DNA of 64,000 bases, from positions 124,001 to 188,000 of IMG/VR virus record IMGVR_UViG_3300024239_000011. The stretch is one strand, 5' to 3'. Shown one piece after another: positions 1 through 45,151 of this stretch. Every line of letters starts with the position of its first letter. Positions within the stretch are counted from its first letter, which is position 1. Both the position numbers and the translations under genes were made by a program. Under the pieces are notes generated by a model that had not been told where the DNA came from, searched no databases, and saw only the letters and a list, made by a program, of their open reading frames with translations.

Positions 1-487
1 TCGCTAATGCACCACCAAGAGAATGCCCGCACCACCATATAGATCGACCGTGTTTATTTGCTTGGATACAGCGTTCCATTTCTGGCCAAATCAAATCCAG
101 TGCATGTTGGAAACCGTTATGAACTTTTCCGCCGTTCTCGGAGTCTGTAAATAGAAAATCCATATCAGTTTTGATGTCTTTGAACTCATTCAATTCGGTG
201 CCACGAAATGCTATTACAATTATATGGGTACCGATGGCAATGAATGCCTGGGTACCTTCACAATCATAAAAATGAACATCCACAAACCCAGCATTAATAA
301 GTTGGGCAGCAACACGCTCATTGTCTCGCAAATATACCAACCGGGAGCATTCTACCAGCCATGTTGCGTTGATAGGACTATAAAGCAATGTGTCATAATC
401 AAATGGATGGGTTTGATGATAATCGAACCAGCCATATTTACCCGGAGGATCAATAATATCTAACTTGGAATAGGAAATCACCCCCAT
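1..487 (-). CDS. Lipase class 3 family protein (partial, runs off the window)
   Basis: Manual translation from ATG at 487 gives IAFRGTE, KVHNGF and the GHSLGGALA nucleophile elbow at the window edge. Confidence 0.85.
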   Translation of the reverse strand, partial: MGVISYSKLDIIDPPGKYGWFDYHQTHPFDYDTLLYSPINATWLVECSRLVYLRDNERVAAQLINAGFVDVHFYDCEGTQAFIAIGTHIIVIAFRGTELNEFKDIKTDMDFLFTDSENGGKVHNGFQHALDLIWPEMERCIQANKHGRSIWWCGHSLGGALA

Positions 488-31836: not shown

Positions 31837-31913
31837 TGGTTCCGGGGAGAGGATTCGAACCTCAAACTTTCCTGATTCAAAGTCAGGCGGCCAGACCAAC
31901 CAGCTACCCCGGA
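31837..31913 (-). tRNA. tRNA-Gln(TTG)
   Basis: U1-A72, loop CTTTGAA, CCA. Confidence 0.9.
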
Positions 31914-32822: not shown

Positions 32823-32908
32823 TGGTTCCGGGAGTAGGAGTCGAACCTACACAGGGCGTTCGCCCCCGCATTCAAAGTGCGGTGTCCTACCAATTAGACG
32901 ATCCCGGA
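32823..32908 (-). tRNA. tRNA-Gln(TTG) with a long variable arm
   Basis: GGGCG-AA-CGCCC variable hairpin; U1-A72, A73. Confidence 0.85.
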
Positions 32909-34840: not shown

Positions 34841-34927
34841 TGGTGCGGCTGACTGGACTCGAACCAGCACGGGAAATTCTTCCCCAGGCTTCTCAGACCT
34901 GTGTGTATACCATTCCACCACAGCCGC
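34841..34927 (-). tRNA. tRNA-Leu(GAG)
   Basis: Cloverleaf with long variable arm. Confidence 0.93.
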
Positions 34928-35104
34928 ATTGTTCTATTCGCGTTCGTCGCGGTAATTCCGATACGCCGCGAAGATGGTGTCCTCACCAAGGTCAGTGATT
35001 TCCGGTGAAACCTTCTCGACATCAAGTGAAGCGACCACGATCACTACCTTCCCTTCCGGGGTAAGGTACGCTTTGTCTTGAACCAACATGTTGAAATCCA
35101 AAAA

Positions 35105-35323
35105 TGGTGGAGGCGAGGGGATTCGAACCCCCGTAGACCGCATAGACCCAAGCATTACCAAGGGCTGGACTTAGGTTTAGAACTTTGGGTGCCCGCTGAC
35201 AGCTTTCGGAAGCCAGAAGGTCGGTCCAAACGAACCCCAAATCCACTTGCGCATGCGTCCCGGTTTTACCCGAGCCGTTGTTCTGTTCCACGGTGCCTAT
35301 GCCGAACTCAGGCGGACGCCCCC
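35105..35323 (-). ncRNA. Short tmRNA-like RNA (219 nt)
   Basis: GGGGGCG/CGCCTCC-ACCA acceptor with G3-U70, T arm, GCATAGGC/GTCTATGC helix, no D stem. Confidence 0.7.
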
Positions 35324-35377
35324 AAATGTTTGACCCATACAAGGATCAGGCAGTTTTGACCCTTGTGGGTCAAAAAT

Positions 35378-35462
35378 TGGTTCCGGGTGATGGACTCGAA
35401 CCACCACAAGGTTTTCACCCACGCATTCAGAGTGCGTTGACCTACCATTAGTCGAACCCGGA
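35378..35462 (-). tRNA. tRNA-Gln(CTG) with a long variable arm
   Basis: GGGT-GAAA-ACCT variable hairpin; U1-A72, A73. Confidence 0.85.
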
Positions 35463-35526
35463 TCAAAGCAAAAGGGCGTGGACCTTATGATCCACGCCCT
35501 CTGCCAAGGGAAACCTGTGTTGTTGA

Positions 35527-35940
35527 TTACCGGCGCCGAGCGCCATACGACCGATGCGGCACCATGTCGTGCTGGTCATAATAATTATTGGGGTTATCGT
35601 AAAACTCATCGCGCTGGGCGCCGTTATCTTGCTGTTGATAGGCGCGAACCCCGTACTCACGCTGCTGTTGCTGCTGCATATACATACAGTCCGCCCGATC
35701 CAGCGACGAACCGACTTCGTTACCGGCGGCGGCACCCAGCAGAGTACCGATGGCAGTCATCGCCAGATTACCGTTGCCCTTACCGAACTGAGCGCCAGCG
35801 ACAGCACCACCAACACCACCCAGAACGGCACCACCGGTCTGCTTGTTAAAACCGAAACCACCGCCGCACGAATTGGCGGGCGATTGAGCGCAGGCGCTCA
35901 GAGCGATGGTGGCGGCGATGGCAAGAAGAATGCGGCGCAT
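35527..35940 (-). CDS. Glycine-zipper lipoprotein (rickettsial 17-kDa antigen-like)
   Basis: LSAC lipobox; KQTGGAVLGGVGGAVAGAQFGKG...SLDRAD. Confidence 0.85.
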   Translation of the reverse strand: MRRILLAIAATIALSACAQSPANSCGGGFGFNKQTGGAVLGGVGGAVAGAQFGKGNGNLAMTAIGTLLGAAAGNEVGSSLDRADCMYMQQQQQREYGVRAYQQQDNGAQRDEFYDNPNNYYDQHDMVPHRSYGARRR

Positions 35941-36023
35941 GGTGACCTCCCTCAAAATCATGAATACAGTATATCTACTGCAATCCAAGATGTCAAGGGA
36001 GGGCCAAGAAGTTTTTCTTGCTA

Positions 36024-38712: not shown

Positions 38713-38786
38713 TGGCTGGGGAAGTAGGACTCGAACCCACATGAACGCAGTCAGAGTGCGTCATCCTGCCATTAGATGATTCCCCA
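38713..38786 (-). tRNA. tRNA-Gln(CTG)
   Basis: Canonical cloverleaf, U1-A72, G73. Confidence 0.93.
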
Positions 38787-42593: not shown

Positions 42594-43286
42594 TTAATCT
42601 ACATACCGGGCGGGGAATACCTTCGCCCACTTATCCGGGTCGTAAAATTCCCCCGCAATGGATGCCTCGAACATTTCCATCCGAACCTTCAGCATTTCTG
42701 CTGTCGGCATCGGCGGAAATAACGAGATCGGTTTGAGATCGGTCCATTTAGCCCGTCCACGCCCTTGGCGGCATGAAACCGCATATTCGTTCGTCCCATC
42801 CCGACGTTGGATGCGGTTGATCTGATAGATGGTCGTAAACGGGTTGTCTTCTGGCTCAAAAGAGAACAATTTTGACTCGACAACCTTCCGGAGGCTTTCA
42901 GGCATCAGGAGGACACTACCCGCCACATTTTCCCAATACTCACCCACCGGGGAGATCACGCACAAATGTTGCTTCTTGAACCAGTAGGACCGTGCCTTGG
43001 CTTGGGAAGCTGGATCATTCTTCTTGAACATCGCGGCGACAATGTTCTGAACGTGGTCATTTTCAAACCCGTAAGTCCGCAAACTCGGGATCGCTACTCG
43101 CACATCACGCTTTTCGATGTCTTTGAAAGGTAGATCGAAAAACATGTATTGTTGCCAGATTTCCGCATTGGAGAACTGCCGAATAGTGAACTCCATGTTT
43201 TCACCTTCCGGAAACTCCGCGAGACGAATCAGCCACTCGAAAGTGGATGGATCATAGGGGTTTGGGGAGTTGATCCATGTTTTCAT
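42594..43286 (-). CDS. Hypothetical protein coupled to aspS
   Basis: 4-nt overlap with the aspS stop. Confidence 0.65.
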   Translation of the reverse strand: MKTWINSPNPYDPSTFEWLIRLAEFPEGENMEFTIRQFSNAEIWQQYMFFDLPFKDIEKRDVRVAIPSLRTYGFENDHVQNIVAAMFKKNDPASQAKARSYWFKKQHLCVISPVGEYWENVAGSVLLMPESLRKVVESKLFSFEPEDNPFTTIYQINRIQRRDGTNEYAVSCRQGRGRAKWTDLKPISLFPPMPTAEMLKVRMEMFEASIAGEFYDPDKWAKVFPARYVD

Positions 43287-45151
43287 TTCGCGGTCACCTT
43301 GATGTGAAGTTCCTTCAACTGTTCCGGGGTGACTTCAGAGGGTGCGCCCATCATCAAGTCCTGCGCCGAGTTGTTCATCGGGAACGCCACGATCTCGCGG
43401 ATGTTCGGCTCATTCGCCAACAACATCACCATGCGGTCGATACCAGGGGCGATACCACCGTGCGGTGGTGCGCCGTAGCGGAAAGCATTGTAGAGCGCCG
43501 GGAATTTAGTCTGAACCACTGCCGGGTCATACCCAGCAATCTCAAACGCCTTCTCCATCACGTCGATGCGGTGGTTACGGATGGCGCCCGACGACAGTTC
43601 CACGCCGTTGCACACCAAGTCGTATTGATGTGCTTTGATGGTCAGCGGGTCTTGGTTCAACAACGCATCCATCCCACCCTGCGGCATCGAGAACGGGTTG
43701 TGGCTGAATTCGACCTTGCCCGTTTCCTCGTTCAATTCGAACATGGGGAAATCCACGATCCAGCAGAACTGGAAGGATTCCTCATCGTAGTTGTCCGACC
43801 GCTTGGCAGCTTCGACACGCAGCTTGCTTGCCCACTGATACGCCTCTTTCTTCGGACCAGCAATGAACATATATGATGCATCCGGTTTTTCAAATTGAGC
43901 GCATGTAGTTTCATCCATGAAATCCACGGCGATGGACCACATCTGCTCGTCGGTGAAAAACTTTTCCATCGGACCAGAAACGCCGGTCAGCACATGCGGC
44001 TCCGTGCGCGCGTGCGACAACGATTCTTTCCAATCTGTGATCTTGAAGTAGCCAAGACCGGGCATACCCAAATCCTTGGCATAGTTATCCATGTCCTTGT
44101 GCCATTTACCCGTCAGCTTTCCAGCGTCGGCATATACCGGGATGCACAACACAACACCGTTCTTATCGATGACTTCCTGAAGGAACGGTGGCGCATTCGG
44201 TGCAACAACCTCCGTAACATCACGGATATAGATGTTGTCGTCCACACGCAGATCGGGTTTGTCGTTACCAAACAATTGGATAGAAGCATCATAGGTGTAG
44301 GTTCGCCATTCCGGGTTGACGTACCAGTTGGATGTGGGTCCGCAATAACTGACTGAGGTGAATTCCTCGAACACCCGCGATACTACATCCTTGACAACGC
44401 CGAACACCTCTTCTTGGGTAGCAAATGCCATTTCCATGTCAAGCTGGTAGAACTCACCCGGCGACCGGTCAGAACGCCCAGCTTCATCGCGGAAGCACGG
44501 GGCAATCTGAAAGTACCGCTGCACCCCTGAACACATCAGAATTTGCTTGAAAATCTGCGGAGCCTGGGGCAGCGCGTAGAATTTACCGGGATGCAAACGG
44601 GCAGGCACCAAATAATCACGGGCGCCTTCCGGACTAGAAGCCGTCAGAATGGGCGTCTGAATTTCCATGAAGTCCTGGCGTACCATTTCGTTGCGCAGCA
44701 TCCAAATCACGTCGGAACGCAGTTTGAGGTTCTGCTGCATTTTCGGGCGGCGAAGATCGAGGTACCGATACCGCAGGCGAGCTTCGTCCGATGCAGTGAA
44801 ATCTTCATCGTGCAGCGTGAACGGAAGTACCGCCGCCTGATTGAAGATTTCAAACTCTTCCACGACCAGTTCATATTTGCCAACGAACCCGAGTTTTTCG
44901 TTGGTAGTGCCTTCCGGGCGCAGACGCGGCGTTCCGCGAACTTCCACACAGCTTTCTTCACGAATCTTTGCCAGGGCGGCAATGTTCGGGTTGTTGGCAT
45001 CAAGCGCACACTGCATTACGCCATCGTAGTCACGGATGTCCACGAACAACAACCCGCCGTGGTCGCGCACTCGGTGAACCCAACCGCGTAAGGCAACCTT
45101 CTGTCCAACTGAACATGAACCGGGTGAACCAATCGGATAGACGATGTACAT
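43283..45151 (-). CDS. aspS: Aspartyl-tRNA synthetase, probably non-discriminating
   Basis: RDHGG, RLRYRYLDLRR, YALPQAPQ, QIAPCFRDE, GAPPHGGIAPGIDR. Confidence 0.96.
   Translation of the reverse strand: MYIVYPIGSPGSCSVGQKVALRGWVHRVRDHGGLLFVDIRDYDGVMQCALDANNPNIAALAKIREESCVEVRGTPRLRPEGTTNEKLGFVGKYELVVEEFEIFNQAAVLPFTLHDEDFTASDEARLRYRYLDLRRPKMQQNLKLRSDVIWMLRNEMVRQDFMEIQTPILTASSPEGARDYLVPARLHPGKFYALPQAPQIFKQILMCSGVQRYFQIAPCFRDEAGRSDRSPGEFYQLDMEMAFATQEEVFGVVKDVVSRVFEEFTSVSYCGPTSNWYVNPEWRTYTYDASIQLFGNDKPDLRVDDNIYIRDVTEVVAPNAPPFLQEVIDKNGVVLCIPVYADAGKLTGKWHKDMDNYAKDLGMPGLGYFKITDWKESLSHARTEPHVLTGVSGPMEKFFTDEQMWSIAVDFMDETTCAQFEKPDASYMFIAGPKKEAYQWASKLRVEAAKRSDNYDEESFQFCWIVDFPMFELNEETGKVEFSHNPFSMPQGGMDALLNQDPLTIKAHQYDLVCNGVELSSGAIRNHRIDVMEKAFEIAGYDPAVVQTKFPALYNAFRYGAPPHGGIAPGIDRMVMLLANEPNIREIVAFPMNNSAQDLMMGAPSEVTPEQLKELHIKVTAK

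What the first reader, a model, noticed from the sequence alone, without database searches (positions are those of the whole stretch)
35105..35323. Compact tmRNA-like RNA with no recognisable tag frame
Seen: an Ala-type G3-U70 acceptor, T arm and P2-like helix, but only 219 nt, one-piece, with no ORF ending in an AA-type degron. Known: alphaproteobacterial tmRNA is two-piece. Inference: tag-free ribosome rescue or an SmpB sponge.
Basis: partly seen in the sequence, partly recalled or inferred. Interest (0 to 1): 0.65.

Follow-up and report, generated by a model that had tools for sequence, protein, structure and literature searches.

The report
Compact tmRNA-like RNA of giant phages
A 219-nt RNA gene in a 543-kb phage genome has the alanine-accepting, tRNA-like ends of the bacterial ribosome-rescue RNA (tmRNA), but its middle is a small conserved fold of its own with no conserved tag-coding frame; it defines a small, unannotated, phage-only family that standard tmRNA finders miss.

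Summary
On the minus strand, window 35105-35323 is a 219-nt RNA. It has a 7-bp acceptor stem with G3.U70, discriminator A, encoded CCA, a canonical T arm and a tmRNA-type D-loop analogue. ARAGORN finds nothing; Rfam tmRNA scores 28.4 bits (cut-off 47), aligning only the ends. It is real: homologues occur in seven Brevundimonas jumbo phages, a 607-kb viral contig and one metagenome contig, always in tRNA arrays. A nine-helix core has 95.8% of cells paired and 14 pairs with compensatory change (shuffles 3.8+-1.5, 0/500). No reading frame is shared by all four lineages. A GCN after hairpin 2 opens frames of 26, 25, 33 and 3 codons with unrelated ends, and none ends in an Ala-Ala degron. The window's genome encodes a full-length SmpB and no other tmRNA. 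The Brevundimonas phages and the 607-kb phage also carry a canonical two-piece tmRNA. A near-identical strain has four tRNAs at this site instead. Best reading: an SmpB-dependent rescue RNA that does not add the usual degradation tag. A decoy role is less likely. It is a new variant of a known kind. Function, expression and the helix joining the tRNA-like part to the body remain untested or unresolved.

The parts
35105..35323 (-). Whole compact tmRNA-like RNA gene, 219 nt (5' end at 35323, 3' CCA at 35105-35107)
   Evidence: Sequence; RF00023 28.4 bits over exactly these coordinates; family model R1 212.3 bits; homologues
35317..35323 (-). Acceptor stem 5' strand, GGGGGCG (G3 at 35321)
   Evidence: Pairs verified by script; invariant in all 8 distinct sequences
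35105..35115 (-). Acceptor stem 3' strand CGCCUCC (35109-35115; U of the G3.U70 pair at 35111), discriminator A (35108), encoded CCA (35105-35107)
   Evidence: invariant
35116..35132 (-). T arm: 5-bp stem GGGGG/CCCCU with loop UUCGAAU
   Evidence: one compensatory G-C to C-G change in L106 (pair 196/210)
35301..35310 (-). D-loop analogue UGAGUUCGGC (compare E. coli tmRNA UGGAUUCGAC, from own knowledge); UCGGCA is invariant
   Evidence: Direct reading; motif located; invariant columns
35275..35293 (-). Hairpin 1: stem CCGU/ACGG with an 11-nt loop that holds the invariant GAACAG. The loop GGAAC can pair with GUUCU at 35179-35183 (candidate pseudoknot)
   Evidence: Stem: 1 compensatory pair (U-A to G-C in L106). 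Pseudoknot: 100% of cells paired, G.U to A-U in L106, no double change
35259..35274 (-). Hairpin 2: stem CUCGG/CCGGG with loop GUAAAA
   Evidence: helix 4: 97.5% paired, 1 compensatory pair (G-C to A-U in L106)
35246..35258 (-). Linker after hairpin 2. It contains the conserved GCN codon (GCA at 35254-35256), the candidate resume codon. The linker is also complementary to the segment just upstream of the T arm (junction model D)
   Evidence: frames; pairing C67-G185 to U71-A181
35166..35245 (-). Central structured domain: a closing helix (35241-35245 with 35166-35170), a GGG/CCU helix, and two internal hairpins (A at 35219-35235, B at 35196-35216)
   Evidence: helices 5-7: 5 + 3 pairs with compensatory change. 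The closing helix reads UGGAU/GUCCA, CGAUC/GAUCG, CGGUU/AGCCG and UGGAA/UUUCA in the four lineages
35174..35183 (-). Invariant block GUUCUAAACC, with UAA at 35177-35179 and a second in-frame UAA at 35171-35173. It is either the stop of a possible short frame or the 3' strand of the pseudoknot
   Evidence: Invariant in all 8 sequences; frames
35146..35165 (-). Hairpin with invariant loop GUAAUG (UAA at 35155-35157). In this window the frame from GCA ends here
   Evidence: helix 8: 3 pairs with compensatory change
35133..35145 (-). 3' linker between the GUAAU hairpin and the T arm; the 3' partner in all competing junction models
35378..35462 (-). Upstream neighbour: an 85-nt class II-shaped tRNA with a Gln anticodon (CUG)
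34934..35089 (-). Downstream neighbour: a 51-codon ORF starting 15 nt after the CCA, followed by tRNA-Leu (34841-34927)
35968..35996 (-). Sigma-70-like promoter (TTGACA-17-TATACT, 11 of 12) about 20 nt upstream of a lipoprotein-like ORF (35527-35940). It may drive the ORF, the tRNA and this RNA as one transcript
   Evidence: The number of promoter-like sites is no higher than in shuffles, so this is weak evidence

Best explanation
This is a member of a phage-specific family of compact, one-piece tmRNA-like RNAs of 214-219 nt. It is probably transcribed with the neighbouring tRNAs and trimmed by tRNA-processing enzymes. Its tRNA-like ends should let alanyl-tRNA synthetase charge it with alanine and let SmpB and EF-Tu deliver it to ribosomes stalled without a codon in the A site. 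In this genome the SmpB is the phage's own. In place of the usual pseudoknot 1, tag frame and pseudoknots 2-4, it carries two small hairpins and a roughly 100-nt domain made of a closing helix, two inner hairpins and a GUAAU-loop hairpin, all maintained by compensatory changes. If translation resumes on it, most likely at the conserved GCN just after hairpin 2, the added peptide differs between lineages (26, 25, 33 or 3 codons) and never ends in the Ala-Ala signal for proteolysis. The likely result is ribosome release without the canonical degradation tag. Shown here: the tRNA-like features, the family, its conserved fold, the lack of a conserved frame, the SmpB gene, and the co-resident canonical tmRNAs. 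Inferred: charging, SmpB binding, ribosome entry, resumption and release.
For: tRNA-like features are present and invariant across lineages, and Rfam tmRNA is the best family match. The RNA is conserved as the only shared segment of 3 kb. Eight distinct sequences fall into four lineages, all within tRNA arrays. Core fold: 95.8% of cells paired, 14 pairs with compensatory change against 3.8+-1.5 in shuffles (0/500) and 0-4 in slid controls. The family model separates members (175-261 bits) from everything else (35 bits or less) in 30 large phage records. The window's 543-kb genome encodes a full-length SmpB (PF01668 176.5 bits; NF003843 189 bits against a cut-off of 130; aligned end to end with ribosome-bound E. 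coli SmpB, including the C-terminal tail). It has no permuted, alpha-type or standard tmRNA. Of 12 SmpB-encoding viral records that are at least 90% complete, 10 carry a full-length tmRNA-sized hit, so carrying SmpB with one's own tmRNA is the norm. A GCN sits 2-3 nt after hairpin 2 in all lineages, at about the same path length from the 5' end as a normal resume codon. Its frame has the lowest pN/pS of the three frames (0.52-0.82 against 0.95-1.46). Published work shows that 2-aa tags and CDS-less tmRNAs exist (PMC11915505).
Against: There is no expression, charging or binding evidence. The one RNA library that holds this phage covers only the neighbouring tRNA. No canonical P2 helix or pseudoknot 1 could be established. 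The candidate resume codon lies only 2-3 nt after a hairpin and may itself be base-paired (junction model D). No frame is conserved: L106 has a stop three codons after the GCN, and the window is frameshifted relative to the Brevundimonas and L104 sequences. The frameshift is confirmed as real. The pN/pS values are far from those of a constrained peptide. Three lineages already carry a canonical two-piece tmRNA with a normal tag, so a second rescue RNA needs its own rationale. A strain 94-99% identical in the flanks has four tRNAs in place of this RNA, so it is dispensable at this locus.
Confidence: 0.45

Rival explanations
1. A decoy (sponge). The tRNA-like part binds SmpB, and perhaps AlaRS or EF-Tu, without supporting rescue. 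That lowers host trans-translation during infection, as was proposed for the TLD-only RNA of mycobacteriophage DS6A.
For: No conserved tag frame. The precedent is a phage TLD-only RNA that inhibits tmRNA when expressed in E. coli (PMC4131195, PMC11915505). All tRNA-like elements are invariant, while the rest tolerates change.
Against: The window's genome encodes its own full-length SmpB, which is pointless if the aim is to deplete SmpB. The Brevundimonas phages and the 607-kb phage carry canonical two-piece tmRNAs that need SmpB. DS6A's element is 83 nt. Here about 125-170 nt of extra RNA is held in shape by covariation, which a simple sponge would not need.
Confidence: 0.2
2. A true tagging tmRNA with unusual, lineage-specific tags. 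Translation resumes at the GCN after hairpin 2 and ends at the first UAA. The tags are AEATDRRGRYDRPPGLRKMVRAAHAF (Brevundimonas phages), ADASGCRGHYDRPVGLESGRRAHAF (L104), a 33-residue tag ending SSPW (this window) and AAS (L106).
For: Between the Brevundimonas phages and L104, indels of -2 and -1 restore the frame, and both tags end AHAF followed by UAA. Within the Brevundimonas phages, 3 of 4 substitution events in this frame are synonymous. This frame has the lowest pN/pS. Tandem in-frame stops (UAA-ACC-UAA or UGA) occur in several members.
Against: The frame breaks in both megaphage lineages. Tag ends are unrelated and none resembles a ClpXP-type Ala-Ala end. Most of the frame runs through helices whose covariation explains the conservation. 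The chance that L104's net indel is a multiple of three is 1 in 3.
Confidence: 0.15
3. A tRNA-like element whose role lies outside trans-translation. Examples are a decoy for host nucleases or defences that attack tRNA or tmRNA, a processing or regulatory element of the tRNA-array transcript, or a mobile cassette.
For: It sits in hypervariable tRNA arrays. A close relative has four tRNAs in its place. Its neighbours differ between lineages. Its inner part has no similarity to any tmRNA or to any Rfam family.
Against: The Ala identity set (G3.U70, A73, CCA), the T loop and the tmRNA-type D-loop analogue are strictly invariant. That points to charging and ribosome-factor binding. The link with SmpB in this genome also argues against it.
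Confidence: 0.15
4. It is an intron-containing or degenerate tRNA-Ala, a decayed tmRNA pseudogene, or a chance resemblance.
For: Scores fall below threshold in both standard detectors. The single-sequence fold is no more stable than shuffled sequence (z = -0.31).
Against: There is no anticodon arm and no tRNA model hit. The RNA is conserved over its full length in four lineages with 14 compensatory pairs. The genome already has four tRNA-Ala genes. The insert has no group I intron or other Rfam match.
Confidence: 0.03

Closest known systems
Standard one-piece tmRNA (ssrA; Rfam RF00023)
   Same: Gene order runs from the 5' acceptor strand through the body to the T arm and the 3' acceptor strand with CCA. 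It has G3.U70, A73, a canonical T loop and a D-loop analogue of the UUCGNC type. A GCN codon lies at a comparable distance from the 5' end, with UAA stops downstream. An SmpB partner is encoded in the same genome.
   Different: It is 219 nt rather than about 350-400 nt. It has no recognisable P2, PK1 or PK2-PK4. It has no conserved tag and no Ala-Ala type end. It scores 28.4 bits against a cut-off of 47, and ARAGORN is negative. It occurs only in phages (0 hits to a three-block pattern in one genome for each of 185,579 bacterial and archaeal species).
Permuted two-piece tmRNA of Alphaproteobacteria and phiCbK-like phages (RF04321, RF01849)
   Same: The acceptor strands are identical to those of phiCbK, Rogue and Colossus (GGGGGCG / CGCCUCCACCA), and the T arm is nearly identical. 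It occurs in related Caulobacterales jumbo phages.
   Different: The gene is not permuted. The inner 170 nt show no similarity above shuffles to the re-ordered pieces. The permuted genes encode normal tags (phiCbK ...AREAIAA; Brevundimonas phages ...GERVLLAA). In the Brevundimonas phages and the 607-kb phage both genes are present in one genome.
CDS-less, TLD-only tmRNAs: mycobacteriophage DS6A, jakobid and oomycete mitochondria, Mallomonadaceae plastids (PMC4131195, PMC11915505)
   Same: The tRNA-like part is retained without a conserved tag frame. DS6A is also phage-encoded. The mitochondrial forms also co-occur with SmpB.
   Different: Those are about 65-90 nt (DS6A is 83 nt), little more than the tRNA-like part. 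This family keeps an extra 125-170 nt held in a conserved fold with invariant blocks (GUUCUAAACC, GGUAAUGC).
tmRNAs with 2-aa tags (Fermentibacterota; PMC11915505)
   Same: They show that very short tags occur naturally; compare GCA-GCU-AGU-UAA in L106.
   Different: As reported, those are otherwise full tmRNAs and their tag is Ala-Ala. Here tag length ranges from 3 to 33 codons within one family.

Membership tests
tmRNA (standard one-piece, RF00023) | tRNA-like acceptor stem with G3.U70, discriminator A and a 3' CCA | tested here: met
   invariant in 8 sequences
tmRNA (standard one-piece, RF00023) | T arm with a canonical T loop, and a D-loop analogue in place of a full D arm | tested here: met
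   T arm GGGGG/UUCGAAU/CCCCU; D analogue UGAGUUCGGC. A 4-bp D-stem-like pairing is also possible (model C)
tmRNA (standard one-piece, RF00023) | P2 helix joining the tRNA-like domain to the body | tested here: inconclusive
   Four mutually exclusive pairings (A-D) are feasible in every lineage, and none is uniformly significant
tmRNA (standard one-piece, RF00023) | Pseudoknot PK1 upstream of the resume codon, and PK2-PK4 downstream | tested here: not met
   The Rfam alignment leaves 173 nt unaligned. The covariation-supported fold has two hairpins and a three-helix domain instead. One long-range loop pairing is possible but untestable (helix 3)
tmRNA (standard one-piece, RF00023) | Conserved tag reading frame: resume codon, a tag ending in a hydrophobic/Ala-Ala signal, then a stop | tested here: not met
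   A GCN is conserved, but the frames are 26, 25, 33 and 3 codons long with unrelated ends; pN/pS 0.52-0.82
tmRNA (standard one-piece, RF00023) | Reaches the curated detection thresholds | tested here: not met
   28.4 bits against 47; no ARAGORN call
tmRNA (standard one-piece, RF00023) | Works with SmpB; alanylated; enters stalled ribosomes | not testable with these tools
   Only an association: a full-length SmpB is encoded in the same genome
Permuted two-piece tmRNA (RF04321) | Circularly permuted gene order (acceptor piece before coding piece) | tested here: not met
   Standard order; RF04321 gives 16.4 bits here against 57-102 bits for the true permuted genes of related phages
CDS-less TLD-only tmRNA (DS6A type) | Little more than the tRNA-like domain (about 65-90 nt) | tested here: not met
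   219 nt with a conserved structured insert; DS6A's element is 83 nt
CDS-less TLD-only tmRNA (DS6A type) | No functional tag frame | tested here: inconclusive
   No conserved frame, but an open frame from GCN to UAA exists in every member
tRNA / intron-containing tRNA-Ala (RF00005) | Anticodon arm and cloverleaf; for the intron case, a recognisable intron in the anticodon or T loop | tested here: not met
   No tRNA hit at this locus from ARAGORN or Rfam; no intron family hit at E up to 10

The most novel reading that the evidence does not exclude
Giant phages of Caulobacterales-type hosts carry a separate class of tmRNA-derived RNA. In it, the messenger part has been replaced by a dedicated structured domain. 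The RNA would rescue stalled ribosomes by donating alanine, or alanine plus an arbitrary short peptide, without marking the product for proteolysis. This would work alongside, or in competition with, the degron-adding two-piece tmRNA, and in this genome together with a phage-encoded SmpB. The conserved domain with its invariant GUUCUAAACC and GUAAU loops would then be a new functional module, for example for placing a stop codon or recruiting a release factor.
Probability: 0.25. Interest if true: 0.8.

Novelty: new variant of a known kind. Interest (0 to 1): 0.62.

Why it matters
tmRNA is among the best-catalogued bacterial RNAs, with about 97,000 curated sequences. This family still escapes both standard detectors and is unannotated in seven published phage genomes, whose authors reported that ARAGORN detected no tmRNAs. 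It is intermediate between full tmRNAs and the bare tRNA-like remnants known from DS6A and organelles. It is small, it lacks the usual pseudoknots and a conserved tag, and it is clearly under selection for a fold of its own. If it is active, it would give a natural minimal system for asking what ribosome rescue needs beyond the tRNA-like domain and SmpB. It would also show why a phage might want rescue without proteolysis. The Brevundimonas phages and their host are in culture, so this can be tested directly. Practically, tmRNA surveys of phages that rely on ARAGORN undercount such genes.

Tried and rejected
1. **Long tag ORF as a family feature.** It looked attractive with three lineages. L106 has UAG/UAA soon after the GCN, and the window carries a real frameshift, so I rejected it.
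2. **Assembly error as the cause of the window's frameshift.** Two independent samples and a different assembler give 0 differences. Rejected.
3. **Origin by un-permutation of the phage two-piece tmRNA.** Local alignment of the inner 170 nt to the re-ordered pieces scores no better than shuffles. Not supported.
4. **A single P2 or junction model.** Models A-D all show apparent covariation and none is uniformly significant. Left open.
5. **A riboswitch or other known motif in the insert.** No Rfam hit at E up to 10.
6. **More homologues.**
   - Five pattern scans of viral contigs, one of metagenome contigs and one of bacterial genomes.
   - BLAST against phage records.
   - A covariance-model search of 31 large phage records.
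   - A neighbour-gene route.
   - Only L104 and L106 were new. Thirty-seven of the 38 hits were chance.
7. **Expression evidence.** The one RNA library holding this phage covers only the adjacent tRNA.
8. **The 2025 tmRNA database.** I could not tell whether it lists these genes; the held supplements contain nothing relevant.
9. **A codon-independent release factor in this genome.** Only a sub-threshold RF-1 hit of 17 bits; no AlaRS.

Full report
**1. What is in the sequence**

On the minus strand, window 35323 to 35105 reads as a 219-nt RNA.
- The first seven bases (GGGGGCG) pair perfectly with CGCCUCC near the 3' end. The third pair is G.U, the main identity mark for alanyl-tRNA synthetase (established knowledge).
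- An unpaired A and an encoded CCA follow.
- Just upstream is a 5-bp T stem with the loop UUCGAAU.
- After the 5' acceptor strand comes UGAGUUCGGC. This resembles the D-loop analogue of tmRNAs (E. coli UGGAUUCGAC, from my own knowledge).

The standard detectors do not call it:
- ARAGORN lists 27 tRNAs in the window, all on the minus strand, but nothing here. It finds no tmRNA anywhere in the 543-kb genome.
- Rfam at its gathering thresholds finds only tRNAs.
- With permissive settings the best family is RF00023 (tmRNA), over exactly 35105-35323, at 28.4 bits against a cut-off of 47. Only the two ends align, and 173 nt are left as an insert.
- The single sequence folds no better than shuffled sequence (z = -0.31). 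The case therefore rests on comparison with homologues.

**2. Where it comes from**

The window is part of a 543,035-bp IMG/VR virus record, judged complete by CheckV. The genome is 48.7% G+C and has 66 tRNA genes. The RNA lies in a tRNA array interspersed with small ORFs.
- Upstream is an 85-nt tRNA (35378-35462).
- Downstream are a 51-codon ORF and tRNA-Leu.
- About 640 nt upstream on the same strand is a good sigma-70-like promoter. It sits about 20 nt before a lipoprotein-like ORF. No terminator follows the RNA. This fits co-transcription with the tRNAs, but the number of promoter-like sites is no higher than chance.

**3. It is a conserved family found only in phages**

A 3-kb query around the RNA matched the seven Brevundimonas pondensis jumbo phages vB_BpoS-* (312-357 kb, Dolichocephalovirinae) only over query 1106-1324. 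That is the RNA itself, at 76-77% identity, in unannotated DNA between tRNA-Ser genes. These phages hold five distinct variants.

Pattern scans added two more lineages:
- L104, 214 nt, in a tRNA array on an 8.3-kb metagenome contig.
- L106, 215 nt, on a 607,744-bp viral contig.

Evidence that the family goes no further:
- A three-block pattern found nothing in one genome for each of 185,579 bacterial and archaeal species.
- A covariance model built from the eight distinct sequences scores members at 175-261 bits. Everything else in 30 large phage records scores 35 bits or less.
- Caulobacter phage C2 also lacks it.

The authors of the Brevundimonas phages state that ARAGORN detected no tmRNAs (PMC10070969).

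**4. The fold**

I wrote a nine-helix core on alignment A4: acceptor, T arm, hairpins 1 and 2, a closing helix of a central domain with two inner hairpins, a hairpin with loop GUAAUG, and a candidate loop pairing. The counts are:

| Measure | Observed | Shuffles | Slid partners |
|---|---|---|---|
| Cells forming a standard pair | 95.8% | 91.3 +- 0.6% | 37-56% |
| Pairs with a change on both sides | 14 | 3.8 +- 1.5 (0 of 500 reach 14) | 0-4 |

- The closing helix reads UGGAU/GUCCA, CGAUC/GAUCG, CGGUU/AGCCG and UGGAA/UUUCA in the four lineages.
- The T stem has one G-C to C-G swap in L106.
- The loop of hairpin 1 (GGAAC; AGAAC in L106) can pair with the invariant GUUCU. In L106 this extends to 7 bp. 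Both sides are nearly invariant, so covariation cannot test it.

How the tRNA-like part joins the body is unresolved. Four mutually exclusive pairings are possible: a D-stem-like hairpin, a canonical-looking P2a, and two others. All are feasible in every lineage and none is uniformly significant. Short G+C-rich helices and few lineages produce apparent covariation easily, so I do not choose between them.

**5. Is there a tag?**

With three lineages a long frame looked promising. From a GCN 2-3 nt after hairpin 2:
- The Brevundimonas phages read 26 codons and L104 reads 25.
- Both end AHAF-UAA.
- L104's -2 and -1 indels restore the frame.
- Most changes within the Brevundimonas phages are synonymous.

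The frame does not hold for the whole family:
- The window has a one-base difference, so the frame runs on to a UAA in the GUAAU loop (33 codons, ending SSPW). Two independent samples and a different assembler confirm that base.
- L106 reads GCA-GCU-AGU-UAA.
- In L106 the frame into the invariant UUC-UAA is only 8 codons long.

A 4-5-codon frame ending in Phe then stop (AHAF, GHPKF, GETLF) can be drawn in all lineages. It has no conserved first codon.

pN/pS in the GCN frame is the lowest of the three frames: 0.52-0.82 against 0.95-1.46. The counts are tiny, and the values are far from those of a constrained peptide.

So every member has some open frame ending in UAA, but none is conserved. 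None ends in an Ala-Ala type signal. Most of the sequence conservation is explained by RNA structure.

**6. Partners and co-residents**

| Genome or group | Compact RNA | Canonical tmRNA | SmpB |
|---|---|---|---|
| Window's genome (543 kb) | yes | none found (permuted, alpha or standard) | yes, full length |
| Brevundimonas phages (Kabachok and Gurke checked) | yes | permuted, 57 bits, acceptor GGGGCCG, tag ...NDNFAAGERVLLAA | none |
| 607-kb phage (L106 record) | yes | permuted, 102.5 bits | none |
| Caulobacter phages phiCbK and Colossus | no | permuted | none |
| Caulobacter phages Rogue and RBC57 | no | permuted | not checked |

- The window genome's SmpB scores 176.5 bits on PF01668 and 189 bits on NF003843 (cut-off 130). 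It aligns end to end with ribosome-bound E. coli SmpB, including the C-terminal tail.
- The 607-kb phage also encodes a PrfH-type release factor and an AlaRS-like fragment.
- Among 12 SmpB-encoding viral records that are at least 90% complete, 10 have a full-length tmRNA-sized hit. SmpB normally travels with its own tmRNA (compare PMC7162821).
- The inner 170 nt of the compact RNA show no similarity to the phage two-piece tmRNAs. Its acceptor strands are identical to those of phiCbK, Rogue and Colossus.
- A strain 94-99% identical in the flanks has four tRNAs where this window has the RNA and most of the small ORF. The RNA is therefore a swappable cassette of a very plastic array.

**7. Interpretation**

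The strict invariance of everything needed for alanine charging and factor binding points to an RNA that is charged and delivered to ribosomes like tmRNA. So does the presence of SmpB with no other tmRNA in this genome.

The lack of any conserved tag, the absence of the usual pseudoknots, and the coexistence with a normal tagging tmRNA in three lineages argue that it is not just a small ordinary tmRNA.

My best reading (0.45) is SmpB-dependent rescue that adds alanine, with or without an arbitrary peptide, and no degradation signal. For a phage this would free ribosomes without destroying products.

The alternatives are:
- A decoy role, as proposed for DS6A (PMC4131195, PMC11915505): 0.2. The phage-borne SmpB, the co-resident canonical tmRNAs and the conserved extra domain all count against it.
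- A true tagger with lineage-specific tags: 0.15.
- A role outside trans-translation: 0.15.
- A tRNA with an intron, a pseudogene or chance: 0.03. The covariation contradicts this.

None of the functional steps has been tested.

**8. Novelty**

The following are already known:
- Phage tmRNAs (about 2.3% of phage genomes by ARAGORN; PMC9004378).
- Phage-encoded SmpB (PMC7162821).
- CDS-less tRNA-like remnants and 2-aa tags (PMC11915505).

What I did not find described is a roughly 215-220-nt one-piece form with a conserved non-canonical body, restricted to giant phages and usually sitting beside a canonical two-piece tmRNA. I could not check the contents of the 2025 tmRNA database. I rate it a new variant of a known kind, of moderate to good interest, and readily testable in the cultured Brevundimonas system.

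Noticed in passing
window 35378-35462 (-) and 32823-32908 (-): Two well-formed tRNAs of 85-86 nt have a long variable arm (class II shape), U1-A72, A73 and encoded CCA, yet carry glutamine anticodons (CUG and UUG). Normal-length tRNA-Gln genes are also present (31837-31913, 38713-38786). Which amino acid they accept is unclear.
   Followed up: partly
L012:1501-1756 (-) and L011:1501-1846 (-) (Brevundimonas phages Kabachok and Gurke): Both carry an unannotated permuted two-piece tmRNA (RF04321, 57 bits) with the tag ...NDNFAAGERVLLAA. ARAGORN misses it, and the genome paper reports that ARAGORN detected no tmRNAs.
   Followed up: partly
G000:449877-450347 (+) = L017:1471-1941, outside the window: The 543-kb phage genome encodes a full-length SmpB with an intact C-terminal tail, about 290 kb from the RNA.
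   Followed up: yes
L154:1486-2085 (-) and G001:29056-29742 (607-kb viral contig): The second megaphage encodes a PrfH-type peptide release factor (TIGR03072, 217.6 bits) and an AlaRS-like fragment. Both are further translation or rescue components.
   Followed up: partly
L161:11206-11552 compared with window 34981-35365: In a strain 94-99% identical in the flanks, four tRNAs (Gln, Ser, Pro, Gln) replace the compact RNA and most of the small ORF. The tRNA array is rearranged cassette by cassette.
   Followed up: partly
window about 43283-45151 (-), by collinearity with L161:304-2172: A 622-residue class II aminoacyl-tRNA synthetase (PF00152 with the PF01336 anticodon-binding domain) and a 60-residue Hc1 histone-like protein lie a few kb from the tRNA array.
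   Followed up: no
L005 and L008, positions 1-61 (-) (Caulobacter phages phiCbK and RBC57): A partial match to GOLLD RNA (RF02032, 42.6 bits, E 5e-9), cut off by the end of the fetched stretch, next to the tmRNA/tRNA region.
   Followed up: no
window 35336-35486: A wastewater metatranscriptome (run X5) contains an exact 151-nt contig over the neighbouring tRNA. This phage, or a very close relative, occurs outside the subsurface and soil samples of the source study.
   Followed up: no
L004:4658-4713 (-): A 4.7-kb viral contig ends in a truncated tmRNA-like 3' end. It has the same T arm and acceptor strand but different sequence upstream, so it may be another tmRNA variant.
   Followed up: no
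window 35527-35940 (-): A lipoprotein-like ORF with a lipobox-type start and a glycine-zipper region (weak Rick_17kDa_Anti match in the L161 homologue) sits directly downstream of the predicted promoter and upstream of the tRNA and the RNA.
   Followed up: no
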